From the IMG/VR virus record IMGVR_UViG_3300036760_000522, positions 186,001 through 250,000 of that record: 64,000 nucleotides of DNA; one strand, written 5' to 3'. A program made the translations under genes and the position numbers. The notes beneath the pieces are model-generated. The model had not been told where the DNA came from, did no database searches, and saw only the letters and a list, made by a program, of their open reading frames with translations. This document shows, piece by piece, positions 23,058 through 63,149 of this stretch (position 1 is the first letter of the stretch; each line of letters starts with the position of its first letter).

Positions 23058-23687
23058 TTAGAGTGAGGAGGCGATCACTGTGTGCAAGGACTCATCGACA
23101 AAACGCCGCTTCGCTTGCGCATAGCGGCCCCAAAGAACGAAGACGACGGGTCGGCCAAGAGCATTGATGGCTTGAAGGGTCGCGTCTGTAAACGTTTCCC
23201 AGCCGTGGTCTCGGTGCGAACCAGGCTCACTGTCACGAACTGTCAGCACCGAATTGAGAAGCAAGATCCCTTGGCGAGCCCACCCCCACAAGGAGCCGTT
23301 CTGTCTAGTAACTCCAACATCCTGCTCAAGCTCGACGTAGATGTTCTGTAGGCTCGGTGGTGAGGCGTAACCGTGGGGCACGGAGAAGCAGAGGCCGTGA
23401 GCCTGTCCGAGCTTGTGATAGGGGTCCTGCCCCAAGATCACCACGCGGACGTCTTCGAGATGTGCCGCCTTGTAGGCGTTGAATATTTTGTGAGTAGGTG
23501 GATAGACAGGTAGCTGCTTCCGTTCGCTGCGTACGAAAGCAACCAACTCACGGAAGTACGCCTTTCTCGCCTCAGTACGAAAGAGTTCCTCCCATGCACC
23601 CCACAAGTTGTTCGTGTCCGCCACTCCTGTGAGCGAACACTGCACAAACGAAAGAGCCAAGAACCCGTAGGCTCCTGGCTCTTTCAA
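23058..23687 (-). pseudogene. ung: Family-1 uracil-DNA glycosylase, C-terminally truncated
   Basis: VILGQDPYH, HGLCFSV, PPSLQNI, LLLNSVLTV and VFVLWG present; stops at IASSL* before the HPSPLS motif. Confidence 0.8.
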
Positions 23688-26289: not shown

Positions 26290-27174
26290 TCAAACTCTGG
26301 TCACGACCAGGCGGCTGACAGCACGTGGGTTGAACGCGCCGATGCCGATATTTTCAAAGACCGAAAATCCGATCAGACGGTTCTTGGGATCGTCGGCGCT
26401 CAAAACCGTGAGTTCTGTACGAACCGGGAACCGGCCAAAGTTCTCGGCTTCCGCGCAGATGTAGATGAACCCAACCGGTACGATTCTGCTCGTGATGATC
26501 TGCGCTCCCCACAACACAGCTTGTAGGCCTGTGTTGAGAAGGACGGCCTGGCTTTCGATATCCAGGATGTCCCGACCGAACTTGCGGATGTCCGCATAGT
26601 CGGTCGCGTTCATGAAGATCCGGGCGACCCGAAGCCCGTGACGCTCGACCTCTGCGAATGCGTCGGCCAAGAACGACGGTGAGACCGGTGCGACCACAGC
26701 CAAGTCAGGGTTGGTCTGACCGGGTAGTGTGTCGAAGCCGCTGACAGCAACGCTGTCAACGATTGCGAAACCGCGCTCGTCTTCAGCTGCTGCAATCTGC
26801 GCTTTCGCCAGGTCCTGAGCACGCTCGATCATGTCGAACCTGCGCTCCTTGATCTGGGAGAGCGGGATCTCAGGATTCGAAGCAATCTCGAAGACCGGGA
26901 AGATCACACGACGTGACTTCTGGATCGACTGGATGTTGGCGCCTTCTTCACCGACGACGAACGCCGTGACTTCAGGATCCTTGTCGTAAACAGGCAAGGC
27001 GCCGTCAGGCAGCTCTTCCACGAGGAAGCTCTTCCGGATGACTGCCACGTAGTCGCGTCGTAGACGCAACGATTGAATCATCGAAGCCGCAAGCTTCTCA
27101 CGCCCTTGCGGTGTTCTGATGTGTTCGCCGATTAGGCGCTGTCGGATCTCGTTACTGATTATGGAAGCTGACAT
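26290..27174 (-). CDS. Major capsid protein (HK97 fold)
   Basis: GREKLAASM...RRDY...ELPDGALPVYD, IFMNATDYADIRKFG, LWGAQII, IGAFNPRAV; follows protease, scaffold and decoration genes; strong terminator. Confidence 0.88.
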   Translation of the reverse strand: MSASIISNEIRQRLIGEHIRTPQGREKLAASMIQSLRLRRDYVAVIRKSFLVEELPDGALPVYDKDPEVTAFVVGEEGANIQSIQKSRRVIFPVFEIASNPEIPLSQIKERRFDMIERAQDLAKAQIAAAEDERGFAIVDSVAVSGFDTLPGQTNPDLAVVAPVSPSFLADAFAEVERHGLRVARIFMNATDYADIRKFGRDILDIESQAVLLNTGLQAVLWGAQIITSRIVPVGFIYICAEAENFGRFPVRTELTVLSADDPKNRLIGFSVFENIGIGAFNPRAVSRLVVTRV

Positions 27175-29147: not shown

Positions 29148-30566
29148 TCACGTAGTTCCTAGGTCAAAGAGCTGACCTTTCTCGATCAAAGCTTTTTGCT
29201 CCGCCGCTGTGAGCACATGACCCAAAACCCTCTGACAAACCGCTAAAAATGCGGTATTTCCGCCATGTCGACGTGGACCTCCCACCTCAAGAACGGTTCG
29301 GTAAACCCGATCAGTCCCCGCCTGCTTGATTCGACCCATTTGGTCCAAAACCCTAGATATTACAAGTACTTCCGCTCCTGACAAAGATTTGTTGTTCGCA
29401 ACACGACGCCAACCACCAAGTCGATGCAAGACAAAACCTGTCAAGATTCGTTGCACACAGTCCGGATTCCGTATTCGAGCAGACAAGTAGCGCTCGACTG
29501 ATCTGAACTCGGGGATCTTAGAAGCTTCGTGTGTGAGGCCTCCATTCGTGTCATCTCGCAGAGTTGAACGAGGTGGAACAGGCCCGTTCAAGTCACTTCG
29601 AACCTTCTCCAAAGCCTTCTGCCGAATCAATTTAGCGACCTCATCAACAGCGGTATCAATATCGCTCGGGGAGCCAGAAGGCGTCACCTCGTTTGACGGA
29701 TCAACGAAGGGGTTCTGATCTTGTGCTGCTTTAAGCGAAGCACCAAGAGTCGCCGTTGGTGGACGTAAAGGCAAAACTTGGTTGAGCTGTGATGCGGCAG
29801 CTTCGCCTGGAAAAAGGTTACGAACAACTGCACCCTTGAATGCCGGATTCGCAACCCAAGATGCCTCGATGAATTTTACGCTGTCATTTTCTGAGGCGTT
29901 GCCACACAACTCTGCCACTTTGTGTGTCTTCCCAAAAGCGTCTTTGAACGTGTTTCCCTTCGCGTATTTTATGTGGCTGCAAAGCTCTGTGTCGTCAGTG
30001 GCCACGTTTCCGCAGAACGAACACTGGCTGTAGAGAATTGAACAACCCATGCTGAGAGAATTGATCTTCCCTGACTCGATCCCAGCAATCAAAGCTCGGT
30101 GCTTCCGATCAGTCGCCACCAAAATGTCAATGTAGACACTCGGGCCCGTGTCCCGGGCCACAGCGTCAATGATCCGTCCCTTGGAGAGCTCCTTGACCTG
30201 TAGGTGCTCCATGAAATTGTTGGCACCAATGAACGTACGATACGTTGCCAACAACAACGGACGGGACCACGCGTCGTTGTTGTTATTTATAAAACGAGAC
30301 GTCTCCGACGTGATGTAGTAATCAAGGAAACGCCGGTTGACTTCAAAGCTGCCTTGTAAGTGACGACCCAGTGGACCTGGACCATTTTCGGTATCCACTG
30401 ACGCCATGATCGTGGCGTGACTCAACAAGTACTGTGCCGGATCGTATTTCTGTAACACAGTGCTCTGTGTAGCAACCTTGCGCCCAGCGGTGACATGACG
30501 CTGCCAAGCATCAACTGAAGCCAAAGGCTCCGCGACTACTGCGTTGGCGTACTTAAGAAAGGCCAT
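29148..30566 (-). CDS. Prohead (maturation) protease with zinc-finger insertion
   Basis: NNNDAW, FMEH...SKGRIIDA, SLSMGC...CSFCG...CSH, FIEASWVANPAF. Confidence 0.8.
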   Translation of the reverse strand: MAFLKYANAVVAEPLASVDAWQRHVTAGRKVATQSTVLQKYDPAQYLLSHATIMASVDTENGPGPLGRHLQGSFEVNRRFLDYYITSETSRFINNNNDAWSRPLLLATYRTFIGANNFMEHLQVKELSKGRIIDAVARDTGPSVYIDILVATDRKHRALIAGIESGKINSLSMGCSILYSQCSFCGNVATDDTELCSHIKYAKGNTFKDAFGKTHKVAELCGNASENDSVKFIEASWVANPAFKGAVVRNLFPGEAAASQLNQVLPLRPPTATLGASLKAAQDQNPFVDPSNEVTPSGSPSDIDTAVDEVAKLIRQKALEKVRSDLNGPVPPRSTLRDDTNGGLTHEASKIPEFRSVERYLSARIRNPDCVQRILTGFVLHRLGGWRRVANNKSLSGAEVLVISRVLDQMGRIKQAGTDRVYRTVLEVGGPRRHGGNTAFLAVCQRVLGHVLTAAEQKALIEKGQLFDLGTT

Positions 30567-30752: not shown

Positions 30753-31013
30753 TCAGCCTTCCAGCAATTTGATTGTCGAACGAAGTGTTTGACCGTGGCC
30801 GCTTACCAACAGCGTTTCGCAGAGATACCGAGCCGCAACGTGCCCCTTGAAGCTGTCGAGAAAGGTCTTCAAACGTTGCTTGTCATCAGTCTTGAGGATC
30901 TGTTGCAAGTCATTGAGAACCTCTGGACGGATACTGCCTGCGGTTACACACTCCTGATAGGCGTGTGCCGCTTGTAACAAGGCTTGTTTGTTCGTCATCA
31001 CACCAATCACCAC
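30753..31013 (-). CDS. Hypothetical protein
   Basis: Fills the gap; start uncertain. Confidence 0.6.
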   Translation of the reverse strand: MVIGVMTNKQALLQAAHAYQECVTAGSIRPEVLNDLQQILKTDDKQRLKTFLDSFKGHVAARYLCETLLVSGHGQTLRSTIKLLEG

Positions 31014-31669
31014 CCAACAGGGGCGCCTTCCGGTCCCAAAATATCAGCTTGTCGAATCAAGTAGAGGTCTCGGGGACAAGCGAACAGTTTGACCTTCTGT
31101 CCTTTGCTCATCTTGTACGTGGTACGTCGCATGCTCGTCCCACACCTCGGACAATTCGGGCGGCCAATCTCAACTTCCGAACGTGTTGCACGATGTTGTC
31201 GATTCTGTGAAAACCAATACGTGGCTTGCTTGTCAGCAAGACCGGACCAGTAGAGGGACTCCGCAAGAGCCGCAAATCTGTAGAACTTCGCAGTTTCCTG
31301 TCGTATGGTTCTGTCCCCAATTTCAGACCCGTACCGCCTCCATTGATCATCGTAAGAGGCAACTTCAGACAGACCTGCATGAAACGATCTGGCCAGCTCG
31401 CGGTAGAACTCCGGGTTCTCGACCAACCACCAAACTGCGGCTGACTTCGTGCCGAACCCATTCACCGAAGACGGAAGACACACCGCGAACGTGATTCCTA
31501 CCTTAGCTAGAGACTCCTCCGTCGACTGTTGGTCGAATGGCCACGCAACCTTGATGTTAGGAGAGACCTCTACGATTCGCCCAACGTAGGGCGACAAACC
31601 GTGCGACCCGAACTTCTGAACCAAGTCACCGGGGCCGAACGAGCGATCGTAGTCCCAGTAGTTGGACAT
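31007..31669 (-). CDS. Hypothetical head-module protein with C-terminal zinc ribbon
   Basis: CPRCG...ACPRD. Confidence 0.75.
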   Translation of the reverse strand: MSNYWDYDRSFGPGDLVQKFGSHGLSPYVGRIVEVSPNIKVAWPFDQQSTEESLAKVGITFAVCLPSSVNGFGTKSAAVWWLVENPEFYRELARSFHAGLSEVASYDDQWRRYGSEIGDRTIRQETAKFYRFAALAESLYWSGLADKQATYWFSQNRQHRATRSEVEIGRPNCPRCGTSMRRTTYKMSKGQKVKLFACPRDLYLIRQADILGPEGAPVGW

Positions 31670-31674
31670 TCATT

Positions 31675-32610
31675 TCACGGTGCGAGAGCGCGCCCTGTAG
31701 ATGACTTGCCGTCCTGAACCGCCTGTGTTTGGTCGTCAGCGTAAGCCGCCATGTAGGGCTCATCAGCGTCGGTCTGTATGGGCCTCGAAGGAGAATTGAA
31801 CGTCGACATGTACGACTCGTCGGAATCGCTCTTCAAAACCTTGGCGTTCTTCAGGGTCTCAACTTGACGTTTAGCCAACGAGCCCTGTCCGTACATACCG
31901 GCTTCGACACGATCCGCGATCTTGTCCAAATGGTTGACAAGCCCCTTGGCTGTGTCAAACGGCATGCCCCAAGACGCGTGTCGCTCCTGAATTGTGTTTG
32001 CAGCTGTATCGAGGTTGCTCAAAACCGTATCGACTGCTGTCTTCTGTTCTTTCGTCATAACTGTTCCTCTCGTACTTGACTGAATTGTCAAAAGAGTATT
32101 CCCAACCCCTGGCTCAGACCGACCAGATAACTTGGCAAGCAAGCGGTTGTAGACCATGGGATCCAGGTCCGTGGTGGTCGTAGGCCCGGCACCGCGTATC
32201 GCCAGATCCAAAGCTGCTCGATACTTGGTCTCAGGATCCATCAGACGCAGAAGCTCAGAATTCAAGCGTTCACGAGCAAGCCTAAGTATCAAGCTCTCAT
32301 CGTGGTCACGACGTTGCGTCCACATAGCTCCGGCCGGAGGCTTGTGATCCTTGGGATCGACGCCGTGGTAAACAGCTTCAACCAACTTCGACATCGATTT
32401 TCGGAAATCATAAGAAGATCCGCCAATCGATTTGTAGTTCTTGCTACGGTCCGGATCGTTGTCTGTATCTGGGTCCCGCTCGGGTTCAGGATCGACTTGG
32501 TTGCGCTGCCTGTCGTGCCGTGGAGGCTTGGATCGAGGGGACTCCCTGACCAGACGAGTCTCTTCGTCCTCTTCACGCTCACCGACAGTTTTAGTCGCCC
32601 ACAACTCCAC
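31675..32610 (-). CDS. Hypothetical head-module protein
   Basis: 311-aa ORF; twin C-terminal motifs SDSDESYM and TDADEPYM. Confidence 0.75.
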   Translation of the reverse strand: MELWATKTVGEREEDEETRLVRESPRSKPPRHDRQRNQVDPEPERDPDTDNDPDRSKNYKSIGGSSYDFRKSMSKLVEAVYHGVDPKDHKPPAGAMWTQRRDHDESLILRLARERLNSELLRLMDPETKYRAALDLAIRGAGPTTTTDLDPMVYNRLLAKLSGRSEPGVGNTLLTIQSSTRGTVMTKEQKTAVDTVLSNLDTAANTIQERHASWGMPFDTAKGLVNHLDKIADRVEAGMYGQGSLAKRQVETLKNAKVLKSDSDESYMSTFNSPSRPIQTDADEPYMAAYADDQTQAVQDGKSSTGRALAP

Positions 32611-32641: not shown

Positions 32642-33727
32642 CTACGCAGAGCGTGGCGCCAGCTGTTCGTGCAGGTATCCCGCGGGACCTTGCTGCCTCA
32701 GGTTCGTCGGATCAGGCACAAGACCCCACTTAGGCGGGTACCACTGAGGTATCGGAAATGGCTTAGGGCGGTAGCGCTTCTTGATCCTGACGCGCTTGAG
32801 CATCCCTTTGAAAGCGGAATGTGAAGCCCGGGAGTACTTACCGATCTCGCAGAACAAGTTCTGACAATCGATCAGTTTCAGGGGACGTCCCCACAAGCCC
32901 TTCCAGAGTAGTCCTCGAGAGTGGAACTCCTCTTCGGCTCTATCACAGACAACCTTGATGACGTCTGCTTCCGACAAGTCGCCGATATCCGTGAAGCACT
33001 TCCGGATCCCGTCTTTGGCACCAAGACCTGCAACGACGTAGTCGTTCTCCGAAAAATTACAGATCGGGCTATAGTTGATATCGACTGCCAACTGAAAAGC
33101 GAGGAACGGACCAAACGACGGGATCGCATGAATCCTGTGGTAAAGGGTCTCGTACGTGTCAGCCGTGTACACAAGCATCGGCAGCTCACCCAACATCGAC
33201 TGCTCCAACAGGCGTAAATGTGCGTGGTGCTTGCTCCTCAAGTTGTCAATGTTTGGACACGGGAGTACGTAAGCGCTGTTGTAGATGGCCTCTCCATAGA
33301 CCTTCAACAGGTCCAGCGACCTTGCGTACAATGCGTATGAGAAGGTTTTCCACGTCAACTCGCCATGTTGTGAAGTCAACCATTCCCAAGTCTCGATCTT
33401 GTTGAACATACGAAAAAGCATGATCCGGAAAAGGATTTCCTCAGGCGATTGGATCCCTTCGTAGATCACGTGGCGAACCAGGTACTGGCTCACACGATCC
33501 GACACCCGGTACACATTCGTGAAACGGTACCCGTTGAGAATCGGATTCGTAGTCCACGGAGGATCCTCTCCGTGGAATCGACGATAGAAAACGTCCTGAC
33601 GAGCGTACGCGAAAGACCAATACAGGTCGTAAATGTCTGTTACAACGAGATGTCGGTTACCAGAGATACGTATGGCCCTCTTGGCCATCGACTTCGGCGC
33701 TAAGATCTTACCCAACTTACCTGTCAC
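32642..33727 (-). CDS. aGPT-PPase1 / 5-hmdU DNA kinase helical-domain family protein (thymidine hypermodification)
   Basis: YWSFAYARQDVF...PPWTTNPIL...RFTNVYRVSDRVSQYL, LFRMFNKIETW, GPFLAFQLAVD, DCQNLFCEIGKY. Confidence 0.8.
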   Translation of the reverse strand: MTGKLGKILAPKSMAKRAIRISGNRHLVVTDIYDLYWSFAYARQDVFYRRFHGEDPPWTTNPILNGYRFTNVYRVSDRVSQYLVRHVIYEGIQSPEEILFRIMLFRMFNKIETWEWLTSQHGELTWKTFSYALYARSLDLLKVYGEAIYNSAYVLPCPNIDNLRSKHHAHLRLLEQSMLGELPMLVYTADTYETLYHRIHAIPSFGPFLAFQLAVDINYSPICNFSENDYVVAGLGAKDGIRKCFTDIGDLSEADVIKVVCDRAEEEFHSRGLLWKGLWGRPLKLIDCQNLFCEIGKYSRASHSAFKGMLKRVRIKKRYRPKPFPIPQWYPPKWGLVPDPTNLRQQGPAGYLHEQLAPRSA

Positions 33728-35565
33728 CCGAACCGACCTTCTTCCTGTTGTTGGGCTTCATCTTTGTGATTCATCTCGAGCTTCAGGTACTTGGAAATAC
33801 GTTCCAAGACATCCGTCTTGTCAACCAAGAGACGCCCCACCTCGTTGTAGAGCGAGCGCAAAACCTCATTGAATATAGCGTCGTTGACAGTGAAAAGGTC
33901 ACGTTCGATTTTGGACTTTGTATCACTCGGGTCGATATTCAACGTCTCAAGAATGAGGTCGATTGAGATCGATCCCTTCGAGTACAGATTGTACAGATCG
34001 TTGAATGTATCTTGGCTGTCTCTCAGCGGCAAGCGTGTGAAAGACAGCTTCGGATGCAACACGACTTCCTGTCCCCACTCGTCCTCCTCGATGAACCCCA
34101 TACGTCTTGCTATCGGGCGGAAAAGGTACTCCTCGACGTACTCCTGCAAGATCTCCCGAAGATGCAAGTAACGTTGATTGATGACCTCAAGCTTGAGACG
34201 GTCACCGGAGTACAAAGACTCCCCAGACATCAAACTTTCCGTCACGCCGAGACCTGCCAAGATTCTACGTTGGACTTGCTCATACTCCGCTGACAAATCC
34301 AGGAGACGATCTCGGGCCCCCATCTCCTCCCAGTGAACTTCATAGTTGGCGACAATCGAGTAGTCAGGATCGACAAGCGCCAGATCCACCTGCTCACGCA
34401 ACGCGTCAGTATCGATATCGCTCAACCCTTCGGCCCACACGATGCGCTTAGGAGTCATTGCCCGAGACGCGATGGACGTCTGAGCCTGCCGAAGTTTATC
34501 AACGTAGATCAGCGACCTAAGGCATCTCCCCAATATAGGTTGACCTATACTGATGTCAGCGTCTTTGCTGCCTGTCAAAATGTAACCGAACGATCCTGCG
34601 TCTGGATCGGTACCAAGGGGTATTGTCTTGCCTGCTTCGAGACATGTGCGAACTTCATTCGGAATCTGTTCGACCAATTTTTTCGCGTCTACATCTCCGG
34701 TTTTCGCACGCTCAATCATTTGACGGTCGCGCTCAGACGGAATCAACTCAATGAGAGGACGGTCACTGTAGCTGAACGTGGTGATTTTTACTTTATCAAT
34801 AGGTATTACTATCAGTCGATCCCACCCTGCATAGTGTTTCTTGTAGTAAGCTGATTCGGCCGCGTCCGTCTCGGGGGTGTCTTCCCAAATTGTCTTGTCT
34901 TGATCGACTGTAGTTCCGTCCTCACGCAAGACGGCTTCCTTGATCGTCTTCTTCGTGCGACCCAAGTCTTCCGGGACTTCAACTGAAGAGTCCTCCGCAA
35001 AAATGCACGTGACGCCGTCGAGCCAGTAATGATGTACGATCGTGATCAGTCGTTGGAACAACTTGATCTTCTTACACATCCGCTCGAAGCGAGACAGAAT
35101 GTACTTTCCGTAATTCTCCGGTGAGCTGAAACCCTCTGGTGCTCTGAGCGGTTTCGGGGCAGTCAGTCGAACTTTCGAGAGAGGAAGCTCTGTGTGGATG
35201 TCAATGGCTTGTCCGACGATCTCATCCGAGTTGTAGAAGTGCCGGAAAATCTCTCGTCGCTCACGAACGCTTTGCGGCAGCTCGAGAAAGTCCGTGGATA
35301 GCTGGGGGCTGTAGAAATTGCTCTGGGAGCTTTGCATGGTCCCACCAGCAGCACCCAAACCAATCCCCGTCCCGCCTCCAAGGCCCATGCTGCTGAGTCC
35401 GAACCCACCCAAAGCACCACTCGACTGAACACGACGAGCAAGACGCTCCTTGAACGTCAGCTGGCTACTGTACGCCCCAGACACGTAAGGCTTGGTTAAT
35501 CTGCGCGGATCTGGAACCTGAATCGCAGCGGAATACCGTCCCGGAAAATTTGAGTAAGCCATCAA
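33724..35565 (-). CDS. Portal protein
   Basis: FYNSDEIVGQAIDIHTELP, ILGRCLRSL, ILAGLGVTESLMSGE, IARRMGF; lies between terminase and head genes. Confidence 0.8.
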   Translation of the reverse strand: MMAYSNFPGRYSAAIQVPDPRRLTKPYVSGAYSSQLTFKERLARRVQSSGALGGFGLSSMGLGGGTGIGLGAAGGTMQSSQSNFYSPQLSTDFLELPQSVRERREIFRHFYNSDEIVGQAIDIHTELPLSKVRLTAPKPLRAPEGFSSPENYGKYILSRFERMCKKIKLFQRLITIVHHYWLDGVTCIFAEDSSVEVPEDLGRTKKTIKEAVLREDGTTVDQDKTIWEDTPETDAAESAYYKKHYAGWDRLIVIPIDKVKITTFSYSDRPLIELIPSERDRQMIERAKTGDVDAKKLVEQIPNEVRTCLEAGKTIPLGTDPDAGSFGYILTGSKDADISIGQPILGRCLRSLIYVDKLRQAQTSIASRAMTPKRIVWAEGLSDIDTDALREQVDLALVDPDYSIVANYEVHWEEMGARDRLLDLSAEYEQVQRRILAGLGVTESLMSGESLYSGDRLKLEVINQRYLHLREILQEYVEEYLFRPIARRMGFIEEDEWGQEVVLHPKLSFTRLPLRDSQDTFNDLYNLYSKGSISIDLILETLNIDPSDTKSKIERDLFTVNDAIFNEVLRSLYNEVGRLLVDKTDVLERISKYLKLEMNHKDEAQQQEEGRFG

Positions 35566-37808: not shown

Positions 37809-39794
37809 TCAGAATCTGGCACGTCGAGGAACGAACCGCGGCGAAACCCCGTGGCGACGTGCCCGCATCATCTGGTATCGACGAGGCGTCATAGTTGTAT
37901 AGGTAGGGTCTCGCGAAAACAATGAGCCGTTGGCCGCATGTTTCTGATTTGCGAGAAACTCTGAAGAGAGGGACACAGCTCGTACGTATGCATCAGCAGA
38001 GTCGTCGAAAGAACCGTGCTTCTGAGGTGCTTGGACATTCACCATATACTTCGTCTTCAAAGTAGCCTGCAAAGCAAACAACTCCAGGATGAAATCCGAG
38101 TGCCGCTCTCCGTCACGAGCCCGCTCTGGAATAGGGAAGTCGTAGAGCCGAAGTCGACCGTCGTACATCAACATCTTGGTGTTTTGAAACATCTTGCTAC
38201 GTTGATCAGGTGTGAAAAACTGTGATGTGAATTGCTTGAGACCCTTCTTGTGCAACGCCTGCTCCAGAGGCAAACCGTTCCACCGGTCGAACAAGCCAGC
38301 TGTGACGTGAAACCACGAACAAACTAGCTCAATCCACTTGGCGATCTCGTCAAAATCTAGCCGTTCCACATCCTGCAAAGACTTTGCAAACTCTGTCGAA
38401 TAGCGACCTTCCAAATGTGGGTTTAGGTCTTTCCACTGACACCCTGCACGCCAAACCTCATGATAGTCCAGGACGACGCTGTCGCGCTCCGGGTGCGTGA
38501 TACAAATCACTGTACCGTCATTGACCAAACCTACGTCTAACCCCATCTGGTGAGGTTCACGAGGACGTGCACGAGACTTAGGTCTCAAGTCACGGTCGAC
38601 GCAAGCCAACAAGTCCGGCTTGCGTTCAATCCACCCAACGCTTTGATCGGAAAACCGGGCACCGTACTCCGTCATGAACACGACGGGGTTTTTGTGGTAC
38701 TCAGTCCGAAAGTAGGCGCCCGAGACTGTGGGGTTGACTTCCCAGGTCGGGGCTTGAATCGCCAAGGTGTAAGCCGCACCAGGATCGTTACGCATCGCCA
38801 AATCGTACTGGTCGAAAAACTTCCCTGACTTTCCTAAAGGTGATGAGATCAGGATGATTCTCGATTCAACGAGGGCTTCCTGTTGTGTCACGGAATCAAC
38901 GAGTATTCGTTTTGTGACTGGATCCTTTCGTGTGTAGGCCGCAGTCGAAGGCGTCAATGCCGAGTAAATCTCTTCAGCCGATCTTCCACCCTTAGTCAAG
39001 TAATGAGCGACCTCATCCAACACGATCAATATATTACCGGGACCACGCAAACTTCGTGCAACACAAGGTTTGAACGTCACACGAATCGACGCTTTACCGG
39101 AAAACGTCGTGTACTTACCGTCACTCTCTCGAGTAGAGACCCCGTGTTTCTCGAGATCACGCGGTGTACGAAAATTCATGAACGTGAGGTTGTTGTTGGC
39201 AATGAACGGCTTGAAATATGAACATCTCCCAACATGAGTTGCCACCTCATTGAACAACAATCCGGCTTGTTCCTTGTCCGTGCCAATGGACGTCAGCTGA
39301 ATCCGACTGCCATCAATGAGTCCGTAGTAAGCTTGAGGGTCATACAAATTCAGTAGCCGATAGACCTCATAGCTTGCAAAGATCCCTGCCATGGCAGTCT
39401 TGCCAGACCGTCGACCAACAGCCAAAACCAATTCACGTCGATCATATGAGGGCTCGTTGATGTTACAGCGACCCTCATTGTACAAATAGTGGAGGTACTC
39501 CACCTCCGTGAACTCGTACAACGTACGAGTTTTGAACATGTCCGTGATGATGATCCGATCTGTCAGATCATCCGGCAAACGATCCAACAGATCGAGTCCG
39601 TAGTAGAGCTTGATGATGAATCGCTGAACCGGGTAGAGCTTCATGCCGAGTCCCCAGGAACTCTCGGCATACGTGAGCACATCAAAAATCGGTGCTATTA
39701 CGTTGTTGTCACCATCTGCCTTGGCAATATCCCGACCAGCTTGTCGAATGAGTGATGCAAGCGACCCAGCGGGAGTCTCGATATTCGCAGCCAT
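37809..39794 (-). CDS. terL: Terminase large subunit
   Basis: Walker A GRRSGKT, Walker B LIVLDE, coupling motif ISSP, nuclease GLDVG, DRWN, DDSADA. Confidence 0.92.
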   Translation of the reverse strand: MAANIETPAGSLASLIRQAGRDIAKADGDNNVIAPIFDVLTYAESSWGLGMKLYPVQRFIIKLYYGLDLLDRLPDDLTDRIIITDMFKTRTLYEFTEVEYLHYLYNEGRCNINEPSYDRRELVLAVGRRSGKTAMAGIFASYEVYRLLNLYDPQAYYGLIDGSRIQLTSIGTDKEQAGLLFNEVATHVGRCSYFKPFIANNNLTFMNFRTPRDLEKHGVSTRESDGKYTTFSGKASIRVTFKPCVARSLRGPGNILIVLDEVAHYLTKGGRSAEEIYSALTPSTAAYTRKDPVTKRILVDSVTQQEALVESRIILISSPLGKSGKFFDQYDLAMRNDPGAAYTLAIQAPTWEVNPTVSGAYFRTEYHKNPVVFMTEYGARFSDQSVGWIERKPDLLACVDRDLRPKSRARPREPHQMGLDVGLVNDGTVICITHPERDSVVLDYHEVWRAGCQWKDLNPHLEGRYSTEFAKSLQDVERLDFDEIAKWIELVCSWFHVTAGLFDRWNGLPLEQALHKKGLKQFTSQFFTPDQRSKMFQNTKMLMYDGRLRLYDFPIPERARDGERHSDFILELFALQATLKTKYMVNVQAPQKHGSFDDSADAYVRAVSLSSEFLANQKHAANGSLFSRDPTYTTMTPRRYQMMRARRHGVSPRFVPRRARF

Positions 39795-62216: not shown

Positions 62217-63149
62217 CTATCGATCTATGCTAGGAACCGCGGCCATCGCCAGCGTATGAAAATGTGTGGGGTCCTTAGCGGTCGTCAAATCCAAATCAAA
62301 ATTTGGAATCACAGCCTGGGCAATGAGCTTGGCCTTGAACTCGCCAACTTCACGGTCGGACAAACCGTACACGGCTATCTCCTTGTCGGACATCGAGGCC
62401 ACTCGTCCCATATTTCCGATAAGGCAATTCATCTCCATGCGACTGAATGTGACGGCACAACGGGCGTAATCGACCCAAGCCTCGAAGGCCAGCGGTGCAA
62501 CACAACGAGCTAAACCAGCCTTGACCCGAGCGAATTCCTGTATCTCCCACTGAGCGTGTGAGTCCGTCCGCAGAGTCAGGAAATGGAGCAGATTGTGGAG
62601 ATCAATCTTCCAGTACCACTCCGTATACAAGCCTAGACTGAGAGGAACACGAGCAAGCTCCCGAGCGATCTCCTCGGTTAGAGCATCAACGTACCCAGAA
62701 CTAACGTGGCTGTAGAGCACTTTCCACGTCGACATCCAACGATCATAGGTTTCACGGTCGGTCTGTTCACTGCGCCCCTGGCGGTTCGCACTGCTCTGTT
62801 TTCGGAAGACTTCAAACTCCGGAACGTAGAATTGTAAAGGAGCCAACGAATACCGCATTGAGAATTCGTTCACATTTGCCGTGCGATGTCGGATCAACTG
62901 ACGCGCAACGAAAATCGGCAGTTTCACGTGAAACTTCAACTCCACCATTTCTAGTGGTGTGGTGTGGTGCTGACGAACCAAATACCGGATTAGGCCACGA
63001 TCGTCACTTACGGTCTTCGTGCCCGGTCCATAGGAAACCCGAGCAGCCTGTACGATCGAGGCGTCCCCGCCCATATAGTCGACGAGAGCAACGAACCCGT
63101 GATTCAAAACCGGAAAGTACTTGCCTTTGACTTCGTCTGCGGTGGGCAT
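62217..63149 (-). CDS. thyX: Flavin-dependent thymidylate synthase
   Basis: AARVSY, HTTPLE, RHRTANVNEFSMRY, ELARVPL, AQWEI. Confidence 0.95.
   Translation of the reverse strand: MPTADEVKGKYFPVLNHGFVALVDYMGGDASIVQAARVSYGPGTKTVSDDRGLIRYLVRQHHTTPLEMVELKFHVKLPIFVARQLIRHRTANVNEFSMRYSLAPLQFYVPEFEVFRKQSSANRQGRSEQTDRETYDRWMSTWKVLYSHVSSGYVDALTEEIARELARVPLSLGLYTEWYWKIDLHNLLHFLTLRTDSHAQWEIQEFARVKAGLARCVAPLAFEAWVDYARCAVTFSRMEMNCLIGNMGRVASMSDKEIAVYGLSDREVGEFKAKLIAQAVIPNFDLDLTTAKDPTHFHTLAMAAVPSIDR

What the first reader, a model, noticed from the sequence alone, without database searches (positions are those of the whole stretch)
32642..33727. Thymidine-hypermodification enzyme inserted directly behind the portal gene
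Seen: a full aGPT-PPase1/5-hmdU-kinase-like ORF overlaps the portal stop (GTGA) inside the head module. No dUMP hydroxymethylase or amino-acid:DNA transferase is visible in the window, while thyX (makes dTMP) and a truncated ung are present. Known: this family acts on 5-hmdU in DNA in phages with hypermodified thymidine. Inference: partial base hypermodification, timed late and possibly coupled to packaging, or a different substrate.
Basis: partly seen in the sequence, partly recalled or inferred. Interest (0 to 1): 0.65.

Follow-up and report, generated by a model that had tools for sequence, protein, structure and literature searches.

The report
Orphan base-modification enzyme behind phage portal
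A 300-kb jumbo phage carries, right after its portal gene, one intact enzyme of a family linked to thymine hypermodification, but none of the partner genes; the gene was recently captured from bacterial anti-phage operons, so it does not by itself show that the phage's DNA is modified.

Summary
The ORF is real. Window 32642-33727 (- strand) matches Pfam PF18723 (HMUDK_hel, formerly aGPT-Pplase clade 1) end to end (E 6e-96). It lies directly downstream of the portal gene in the head operon.

The phage genome (301.5 kb, terminal repeats) has no hmU source (no ThyA-like enzyme, no Tet/JBP). It also lacks the 5-hmdU DNA kinase, MazG_C kinase, amino-acid:DNA transferase and TAGT glycosyltransferase. 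So this is not a self-contained thymidine-hypermodification pathway.

The gene is a recent capture. Only a 91-97% sister phage has it; 0 of 39 other related jumbo-phage records do. It is under purifying selection (dN/dS 0.13) and keeps the family's invariant motifs, including a Cys-Glu pair.

Its nearest kin (50-55% identity, over 8000 proteins, at least 560 bacterial species) are bacterial. There the gene sits with nucleotide kinases, ThyA-like enzymes, TIR and Nmad2 proteins. One operon of that type (DS-4) is an experimentally validated anti-phage system.

My best reading is a late-expressed orphan accessory enzyme acting on host-made hydroxymethyl- or phosphomethyl-pyrimidine, possibly as counter-defence. 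That function is inferred, not shown.

The parts
32642..33727 (-). Stand-alone PF18723 (HMUDK_hel / aGPT-Pplase clade 1) gene, 361 aa as the longest ORF. The probable start is ATG at 33688 (348 aa). It has a conserved Cys293-Glu294 pair.
33724..35565 (-). Portal protein gene. Its TGA stop overlaps the GTG of the longest ORF downstream.
31675..32610 (-). 311-aa protein. It is a minimal version of the 900-1360 aa protein that follows the portal gene in related jumbo phages; the central variable region is missing here.
31007..31669 (-). Conserved 220-aa head-module protein of unknown function.
29148..30566 (-). Prohead (head maturation) protease.
26290..27174 (-). Major head protein.
37809..39794 (-). 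Terminase large subunit.
62217..63149 (-). ThyX flavin-dependent thymidylate synthase. It makes dTMP and is not specific to the PF18723 gene: the nearest relative without that gene also has ThyX.
23058..23687 (-). UDG-superfamily ORF of 209 aa with partial model coverage.

Best explanation
The ORF encodes an intact stand-alone member of PF18723. Shown: it is a helical enzyme with a DNA-glycosylase-like (HhH) predicted fold that keeps the family's invariant motifs. Shown: this phage lineage acquired it recently from the large bacterial branch of the family, it sits between the portal gene and the next head gene, and it is kept by purifying selection.

Inferred: Cys293 corresponds to the catalytic cysteine of the clade-2 transferases (Cys247 in PaMx11 gp46), which attacks C6 of a pyrimidine. 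Inferred: the gene is co-transcribed late with the head genes.

The phage encodes no way to make 5-hmdU, no base kinase and no transferase. It therefore cannot run a thymidine-hypermodification pathway on its own.

Inferred: the enzyme acts on 5-hydroxymethyl- or 5-phosphomethyl-pyrimidine, in DNA or as nucleotides, supplied by the host. The likely source is the host's own ThyA-like/kinase/PF18723/TIR/Nmad2 defence operons (DS-4 type). It would then intercept or compete for that intermediate, which is a counter-defence or accessory role.
For: Family identity and intactness:
- Pfam match at E 6e-96, full length.
- 120 invariant columns shared with 19 homologues.
- The CE...KY motif is shared with M6 gp55 (hhalign probability 98.6%).
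- The motif around Cys293 resembles M6 gp51 Cys247. The role of Cys247 comes from PMC11472151.
- AF2 model with pLDDT 79. Best structural match is 8z2n, PaMx11 gp46: Z 10.2, 227 residues aligned, rmsd 4.0. Next come QNG1 and Ogg-type glycosylases.

Orphan status:
- Whole-genome searches are negative for PF00303, PF12851, PF18748, PF18724, PF20691 and PF18722.
- phmmer and tblastn with 20 partner proteins found only a Tmk-like gene.

Recent capture:
- Only the sister phage has the gene, in the same position.
- 0 of 39 other related records have it, including 9 that are at least 90% complete.
- In the tree the phage pair sits on a long stem nested inside bacterial sequences.

Selection: dN/dS is 0.13, similar to the neighbouring genes.

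Bacterial context:
- Over 8000 homologues at 50-55% identity and at least 560 species genomes.
- 71 of 77 loci have recognisable partners and 58 of 77 have a kinase.
- One cassette sits inside a type I restriction-modification locus.
- DS-4/NTTI (TS, kinase, PF18723, TIR, Nmad2) was validated as anti-phage (PMC13092281).
Against: - No biochemical activity has ever been shown for a clade-1 protein. Pfam treats the domain as the helical domain of the kinase, so it may be an adaptor rather than an enzyme.
- The host is unknown, so whether it carries a DS-4-like system is untested.
- Late expression is unusual for a counter-defence gene unless the protein is packaged, and I saw no packaging signal.
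- Other viruses with close homologues mostly do carry a ThyA-like gene (6 of 9 records). In those, the family does look like part of a modification pathway.
- A very divergent hmU-forming enzyme could escape the Pfam models.
Confidence: 0.4

Rival explanations
1. The enzyme takes part in partial hypermodification of the phage's own thymidines, late and perhaps during packaging, with partner enzymes that are too divergent to recognise or are supplied by the host.
For: The family is genetically linked to T-hypermodification clusters: M6 gp54/gp55, the SP10 fusion and the LuckyBarnes cluster. Close viral homologues sit next to ThyA-like, kinase and radical-SAM genes. Many phage T-dioxygenases escape the Tet_JBP model (PMC13229309).
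Against: The genome has no PF00303, PF12851, PF18748, PF18724 or PF18722 match even at E<=1. The phage makes ordinary dTMP with ThyX. Clade 1 was dispensable for the transfer step in vitro. The gene is absent from all 39 other relatives, so it is not part of the clade's DNA biology.
Confidence: 0.15
2. The protein is a catalytically silent DNA-binding, base-flipping adaptor, as in Pfam's view of it as the kinase's helical domain. Alone, it either recruits a host kinase or simply occupies sites or partners of the host system as a dominant-negative decoy.
For: PF18723 is fused to or adjacent to a nucleotide kinase in 58 of 77 bacterial loci and in phage clusters. The kinase alone phosphorylates hmdU DNA in vitro (PMC8989533).
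Against: The invariant Cys-Glu, Asp and Lys-His motifs are kept across phage and bacterial copies. That conservation suggests catalysis rather than binding alone.
Confidence: 0.15
3. The gene is a neutral or selfish passenger inserted behind the portal gene, with no role in the phage life cycle.
For: The gene is lineage-specific. The same slot holds a LAGLIDADG homing endonuclease in a relative. All known partners are missing.
Against: dN/dS is 0.13 over dS 0.36 against the sister phage. The frame is intact in two independent assemblies and G+C matches the surrounding genome. All family-invariant residues are retained despite a long stem branch.
Confidence: 0.12
4. The enzyme works with the phage's own ThyX and Tmk-like genes in an unprecedented ThyX-based route to a C5-modified pyrimidine.
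For: Another viral contig places a close homologue two genes from ThyX and next to MazG (L011). This genome has ThyX and a Tmk-like gene.
Against: ThyX and Tmk are also present in the nearest relative that lacks the gene (G036). The Tmk-like gene lies 192 kb away and is split by a frameshift. No ThyX hydroxymethylase is known.
Confidence: 0.05

Closest known systems
Clade-1 aGPT-Pplase / HMUDK_hel proteins of thymidine-hypermodifying phages (M6 gp55, SP10 gp186 C-terminal domain)
   Same: Same Pfam family (PF18723). The hhalign probability to M6 gp55 is 98.6%, with shared PPWT, KH, AGPGA and CE..KY motifs.
   Different: Identity is only about 24-33%. Those genes sit beside a P-loop 5-hmdU DNA kinase, a clade-2 transferase and a dUMP hydroxymethylase in the DNA-metabolism module. 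Here the gene is alone in the head operon.
Bacterial PF18723 proteins of nucleotide-modifying defence operons (DefensePredictor DS-4/'NTTI'; TIR-ThsB-Nmad2-MazG_C cassettes)
   Same: These are the closest sequence relatives: 50-55% identity, the same length, all motifs shared, and the phage copy nested among them in the tree.
   Different: The bacterial genes are embedded in 5-6 gene operons with a kinase, a ThyA-like enzyme or MazG_C, TIR and Nmad2, or with an HTH/ImmA regulator pair. None of these partners is in the phage.
Clade-2 amino-acid:DNA transferases (PaMx11 gp46/PUGT, M6 gp51, YuA Pplase2; PF18724)
   Same: Best structural match: Z 10.2, 227 residues aligned, rmsd 4.0. A similar ...L-C... 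motif lies near the C-terminus, with an acidic residue six positions upstream.
   Different: There is no PF18724 sequence match and hhalign to M6 gp51 failed. Substrate, nucleophile and metal dependence are unknown for clade 1.
Virion-delivered anti-restriction proteins encoded in late or head operons (T4 IPI*, P1 DarA/DarB)
   Same: The gene sits among head genes and would be made late. This is an analogy from my own knowledge, not a tested relationship.
   Different: There is no sequence relationship, and no evidence here that the protein is packaged.

Membership tests
Pfam PF18723 HMUDK_hel (aGPT-Pplase clade 1) | Full-length profile match above the gathering score | tested here: met
   321.5 bits against a cut-off of 25, model positions 2-280 of 281; 322 bits in the six-frame genome search.
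Pfam PF18723 HMUDK_hel (aGPT-Pplase clade 1) | Family-invariant motifs, including the C-terminal Cys-Glu pair | tested here: met
   120 invariant columns shared with 19 homologues. The CE..KY motif is also shared with M6 gp55.
Pfam PF18723 HMUDK_hel (aGPT-Pplase clade 1) | All-alpha, HhH DNA-glycosylase-like fold | tested here: inconclusive
   Top VIA matches are gp46/PUGT (Z 10.2), QNG1 (Z 9.3) and Ogg/AGOG (Z 7-8.5), which is consistent. Foldseek E-values are all above 0.1, and Z below about 13 is weak for helical proteins.
Pfam PF18723 HMUDK_hel (aGPT-Pplase clade 1) | Fused to or next to a nucleotide kinase (P-loop HMUDK, Tmk-like or MazG_C) | tested here: not met
   No PF18748 or PF18722 match anywhere in the genome. 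The only Tmk-like gene is 192 kb away and frameshifted.
Phage thymidine-hypermodification pathway (Lee et al. 2018, 2021) | A source of 5-hmdU: dUMP hydroxymethylase (ThyA family) or T-dioxygenase (Tet/JBP) | tested here: not met
   No PF00303 and no PF12851 match in 301,550 bp. ThyX is present instead.
Phage thymidine-hypermodification pathway (Lee et al. 2018, 2021) | 5-hmdU DNA kinase (PF18748) | tested here: not met
   (E<=1, no match). M6 gp54 used as a query found nothing significant.
Phage thymidine-hypermodification pathway (Lee et al. 2018, 2021) | Clade-2 amino-acid:DNA transferase (PF18724) | tested here: not met
Phage thymidine-hypermodification pathway (Lee et al. 2018, 2021) | Hypermodified thymidine in virion DNA | not testable with these tools
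   This needs nucleoside LC-MS or raw nanopore signal. Only contigs of a sediment metagenome are available.
DS-4/NTTI-type bacterial defence operon (DefensePredictor) | Operon of TS-like, dNMP kinase, PF18723, TIR and Nmad2 genes | tested here: not met
   Only the PF18723 gene is present. phmmer and tblastn with TIR, ThsB, Nmad2, MazG_C and ThyA-like queries were negative.
DS-4/NTTI-type bacterial defence operon (DefensePredictor) | PF18723 component belongs to the same sequence branch | tested here: met
   50-55% identity to bacterial copies that sit in such cassettes. The phage copy is nested in a clade dominated by MazG_C/TIR/Nmad2 contexts, SH-aLRT 92. Identity to the E. coli DS-4 protein itself was not measured.

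The most novel reading that the evidence does not exclude
The phage captured one component of a bacterial nucleotide-modifying immune system (DS-4 type: ThyA-like, kinase, PF18723, TIR, Nmad2). It uses that component, made late and possibly delivered with the virion, as a counter-defence enzyme or decoy. The protein would intercept the 5-hydroxymethyl- or 5-phosphomethyl-pyrimidine intermediate that the host system installs or produces.
Probability: 0.2. Interest if true: 0.75.

Novelty: new variant of a known kind. Interest (0 to 1): 0.45.

Why it matters
No activity has been assigned to the clade-1 'aGPT-Pplase'/HMUDK_hel proteins, although they are very widespread: over 8000 close homologues and at least 560 bacterial species for this branch alone. 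They also occur in a validated anti-phage system.

A naturally isolated, selectively maintained orphan copy is a useful handle, because whatever it does it must do without its usual kinase and hydroxymethylase partners. If it neutralises DS-4-type immunity, that would be a new anti-defence principle and would point to the chemistry of that system.

The finding also carries a practical warning. A PF18723 match alone should not be annotated as evidence of hypermodified phage DNA.

Tried and rejected
- Megablast of the 8-kb region against the phage collection found no match.
- P0001 had no hit in the PDB sequence search, NCBIfam or PADLOC.
- Foldseek against PDB gave nothing at E<=1e-3. The VIA re-alignment was used instead.
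- hhalign of the clade-1 alignment against the single M6 gp51 sequence failed (probability 0.08). The Cys293 to Cys247 equivalence therefore rests on motif and position only.
- Promoter and terminator scans around the gene were not above the shuffled expectation. A weak hairpin at 32638-32622 was not taken as a terminator.
- The weak PHROG 800 'terminase small subunit' hit was rejected as a packaging link. RefSeq labels the M6 5-hmdU DNA kinase gp54 'terminase small subunit', so that label probably comes from mis-annotated kinase or PF18723 proteins.
- Tmk-like and ThyX were rejected as partners specific to this gene. Both are present in the nearest relative that lacks it, and the Tmk-like gene is frameshifted.
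- The idea that the gene replaces the missing central region of the 311-aa protein was rejected. It lies upstream of that protein's conserved N-terminus, and none of the large homologues matches PF18723.
- Not used: read laying, complex prediction (no binding claim is made) and the large representative protein search (the word search was already saturated).

Full report
**1. The observation**

The window is bases 186001-250000 of a 301,550-bp IMG/VR virus record with direct terminal repeats, that is, a jumbo phage. The ORF at 32642-33727 on the - strand translates to 361 aa (P0001). It matches Pfam PF18723 at E 6.3e-96, covering positions 2-280 of the 281-position model. [quoted passage not shown] The only other library hit is PHROG 2396, of unknown function.

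The ORF immediately upstream, 33724-35565 (-), is the portal. Around it on the same strand lie the terminase large subunit, the prohead protease and the major head protein. The GTGA overlap with the portal stop exists in the sequence.

The start codon is less certain. Comparison with the sister phage shows that the 36 nt after GTGA have diverged and carry a 15-nt indel, while conservation resumes 19 nt before the ATG at 33688. The close homologue P0004 was called from that ATG, and the bacterial homologues start at the equivalent position. The real start is therefore probably ATG 33688. Either way the gene follows the portal gene directly, on the same strand, and no promoter or terminator signal stands out above chance.

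**2. Partner genes**

I searched the whole genome in six frames. There is exactly one PF18723 gene. The following were all absent at E<=1:
- thymidylate-synthase/dUMP-hydroxymethylase family, PF00303
- Tet/JBP dioxygenase, PF12851
- P-loop 5-hmdU DNA kinase, PF18748
- clade-2 amino-acid:DNA transferase, PF18724
- TET-associated glycosyltransferase, PF20691
- MazG_C kinase, PF18722

phmmer and tblastn with 20 partner proteins taken from other loci found only a Tmk-like gene. That gene lies 192 kb away and is split by a frameshift.

ThyX (window 62217-63149) and a UDG-superfamily ORF (23058-23687) are present. The nearest relative that lacks the PF18723 gene (G036, portal 72% identical) also has ThyX and Tmk. 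These two genes are therefore ordinary thymidylate metabolism, not partners.

**3. What the literature says about the family**

The experimentally defined steps of thymidine hypermodification are:
- dUMP hydroxymethylase or T-dioxygenase producing 5-hmdU
- the P-loop 5-HMUDK producing 5-PmdU
- the clade-2 aGPT-Pplase, now AADT (PF18724), producing the amino-acid or polyamine adduct

These steps come from PMC5889632, PMC8989533, PMC13458397 and PMC13229309. In my own Pfam scan, M6 gp51 is PF18724, gp54 is PF18748 and gp55 is PF18723. gp55 was dispensable for the transfer reaction in vitro. I found no paper that assigns an activity to a clade-1 protein.

**4. The protein itself**

P0001 shares 120 invariant columns with 19 homologues. 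It shares the PPWT, KH..HL, AG.GA and D.....CE..KY motifs with M6 gp55 (hhalign probability 98.6%).

The AlphaFold model has mean pLDDT 79. Its best structural match is PaMx11 gp46/PUGT (8z2n: Z 10.2, 227 residues aligned, rmsd 4.0). Next come the queuine-salvage enzyme QNG1 (Z about 9) and Ogg/AGOG/AlkA-type HhH glycosylases (Z 6-8.5). Foldseek alone gave only weak hits.

The motif D287-C-Q-N-L-F-C293-E294 resembles E241-V-E-T-V-L-C247 of M6 gp51. Cys247 is the proposed C6-attacking nucleophile in gp46 (PMC11472151). I therefore infer, but have not shown, that P0001 is a catalytically competent pyrimidine-C5 enzyme rather than a mere helical adaptor.

**5. Where the gene came from**

Sixty-nine viral contigs encode related portals at 42-97% identity. 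Only the sister phage (IMGVR_UViG_3300037424_001177) has the PF18723 gene, and it has it in the same place. The whole-record search was run on 40 of these 69 contigs. In that search, none of the 39 other related records has the gene anywhere, including nine that are at least 90% complete.

In the relatives the portal gene is followed directly by a 900-1360 aa protein. Its N-terminal 65 aa or so and C-terminal 245 aa or so correspond to the window's 311-aa ORF. In one relative a LAGLIDADG homing endonuclease occupies the same slot. In another the large protein carries HAD and topoisomerase-IB domains.

Against the sister phage the gene has dN/dS 0.13 (dS 0.36), like its neighbours. Its G+C content is unremarkable. 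The gene is thus a recent, lineage-specific acquisition that is being maintained.

**6. Closest relatives and their context**

The word-based search returned about 8000 proteins, the best at 50-55% identity and of the same length. Many come from bacterial chromosomes such as Myxococcus, Corallococcus and Marinobacterium. By comparison, identity to homologues in cultured phages is only 25-33%. A motif scan hit at least 560 of the species-representative bacterial genomes, across many phyla, but only 10 IMG/VR contigs.

In 77 bacterial loci, 71 have recognisable partners and 58 have a nucleotide kinase. The kinase is either MazG_C or Tmk-like, and the Tmk-like form is often fused to the PF18723 domain. 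The partner counts were:
- ThyA-like enzyme: 20 loci
- radical-SAM enzyme: 11 loci
- TIR and/or Nmad2: 25 loci
- ImmA-like peptidase or the adjacent conserved protein of about 270 aa with no Pfam match: 40 loci

Pfam scans of example loci confirmed two operon types:
- HTH, ImmA-like peptidase (Peptidase_M78), a conserved protein of unknown function, PF18723, MazG-MazG_C
- ThsB-TIR, Nmad2, Tmk-like kinase, PF18723, ThyA-like enzyme, dCTP-deaminase-like enzyme

One cassette lies inside a type I restriction-modification locus.

The DefensePredictor study cloned an E. coli operon (DS-4, working name NTTI). It contains a thymidylate synthase, a kinase, a PF18723 protein, a TIR protein and Nmad2. 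The study lists that operon among its validated defence systems (PMC13092281 and its supplement).

A maximum-likelihood tree places the phage pair on a long stem (1.23 changes per site) nested inside the bacterial sequences. It falls in a 27-row clade (SH-aLRT 92) dominated by MazG_C/TIR/Nmad2 contexts.

Other viral contigs with close homologues mostly do carry a ThyA-like gene (6 of 9 records). One contig combines the gene with QueD/QueE-like genes, MazG and ThyX. The complete lack of partners in this phage is therefore unusual even among viruses.

**7. Interpretation**

Shown:
- The ORF is a genuine, intact, selected, recently acquired stand-alone PF18723 gene in the head operon.
- The phage lacks every known partner.

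Inferred:
- The gene is expressed late together with the portal.
- The protein has catalytic competence through Cys293 and Glu294.
- Because it cannot make its usual substrate, the enzyme most plausibly acts on hydroxymethyl- or phosphomethyl-pyrimidine supplied by the host. The likely source is the host's own PF18723-containing defence operon, which would give the phage protein a counter-defence or accessory role.

I give this reading 0.4. The rivals are self-hypermodification with hidden or host partners (0.15), a non-catalytic adaptor or decoy (0.15), a passenger gene (0.12) and a ThyX-based route (0.05).

**8. Novelty**

The family and both of its known settings are described: phage hypermodification clusters and bacterial defence operons. 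A solitary copy wired into a jumbo-phage head operon is a new arrangement of a known kind. The practical lesson is that a PF18723 hit alone is not evidence of hypermodified DNA.

The source sample is a sediment metagenome. No RNA or virion data are available.

Noticed in passing
window 31675-32610 (-); L114-L151, L171: The 311-aa protein after the PF18723 gene is a minimal version of a 900-1360 aa protein that follows the portal gene in 60+ related jumbo phages. The N-terminal 65 aa or so and the C-terminal 245 aa or so are conserved, and the variable central 600-1000 aa are missing here. This may be an internal-head or cargo-carrier protein.
   Followed up: partly
L179:9960-13334: In one relative the homologue of that protein carries HAD_SAK_1 and eukaryotic-type topoisomerase I (IB) catalytic domains ahead of the conserved N-terminal segment.
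   Followed up: partly
L178:7795-8904: A LAGLIDADG homing endonuclease with HTH domains sits between the portal gene and the next gene in a related 412-kb phage. This is the same slot that holds the PF18723 gene here.
   Followed up: partly
L163, L165, L168, L172-L174, L176, L180 (portal); L164, L165, L170, L177 (TerL): Several relatives have portal ORFs of 980-1470 aa and terminase ORFs of 1070-1176 aa, about twice the usual size. Only part of the portal query (for example residues 328-612) matched, which suggests inteins or inserted domains.
   Followed up: no
G000:C1:26700-27600 (outside the window): The only thymidylate-kinase-like gene of the genome is split between two reading frames. 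The N-terminal P-loop part ends in a stop and the C-terminal part continues in another frame. This could be a frameshift, a pseudogene or an assembly error.
   Followed up: partly
window 23058-23687 (-): A 209-aa UDG-superfamily ORF lies among the structural genes and matches only positions 7-102 of the 141-position model. It may be a divergent UDG family rather than a truncated ung.
   Followed up: partly
window, 51 ORFs scanned together: The window also encodes RecA, a RecD2-like helicase, a 5'-3' exonuclease, a DNA pol III delta'-like clamp-loader protein, two sigma-70 region-4 proteins, a LAGLIDADG endonuclease, a PD-(D/E)XK nuclease, a BRCT/HhH protein and a phage metallopeptidase. I did not map these hits to individual ORFs.
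   Followed up: no
L011:297-6114 (IMGVR_UViG_3300014325_000037): A 26-kb viral contig groups QueE-like radical SAM, QueD/PTPS, PF18723, MazG, ThyX, a methyltransferase and a GIY-YIG nuclease. It looks like a possible combined deazaguanine and pyrimidine modification module without a ThyA-like gene.
   Followed up: partly
L002:16686-17249 (Pseudomonas phage M6 gp54): RefSeq labels the experimentally proven 5-hmdU DNA kinase gp54 'terminase small subunit'. This probably explains the weak PHROG 800 'terminase small subunit' hit of P0001 and could mislead automated annotation.
   Followed up: partly
G000 versus relatives G004-G038: This phage (301.5 kb, terminal repeats, CheckV 62%) is 100-230 kb smaller than the complete relatives (398-529 kb). 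Thymidylate synthesis is patchy across 15 relatives: ThyX in 7, ThyA in 4, Tmk in 1.
   Followed up: partly
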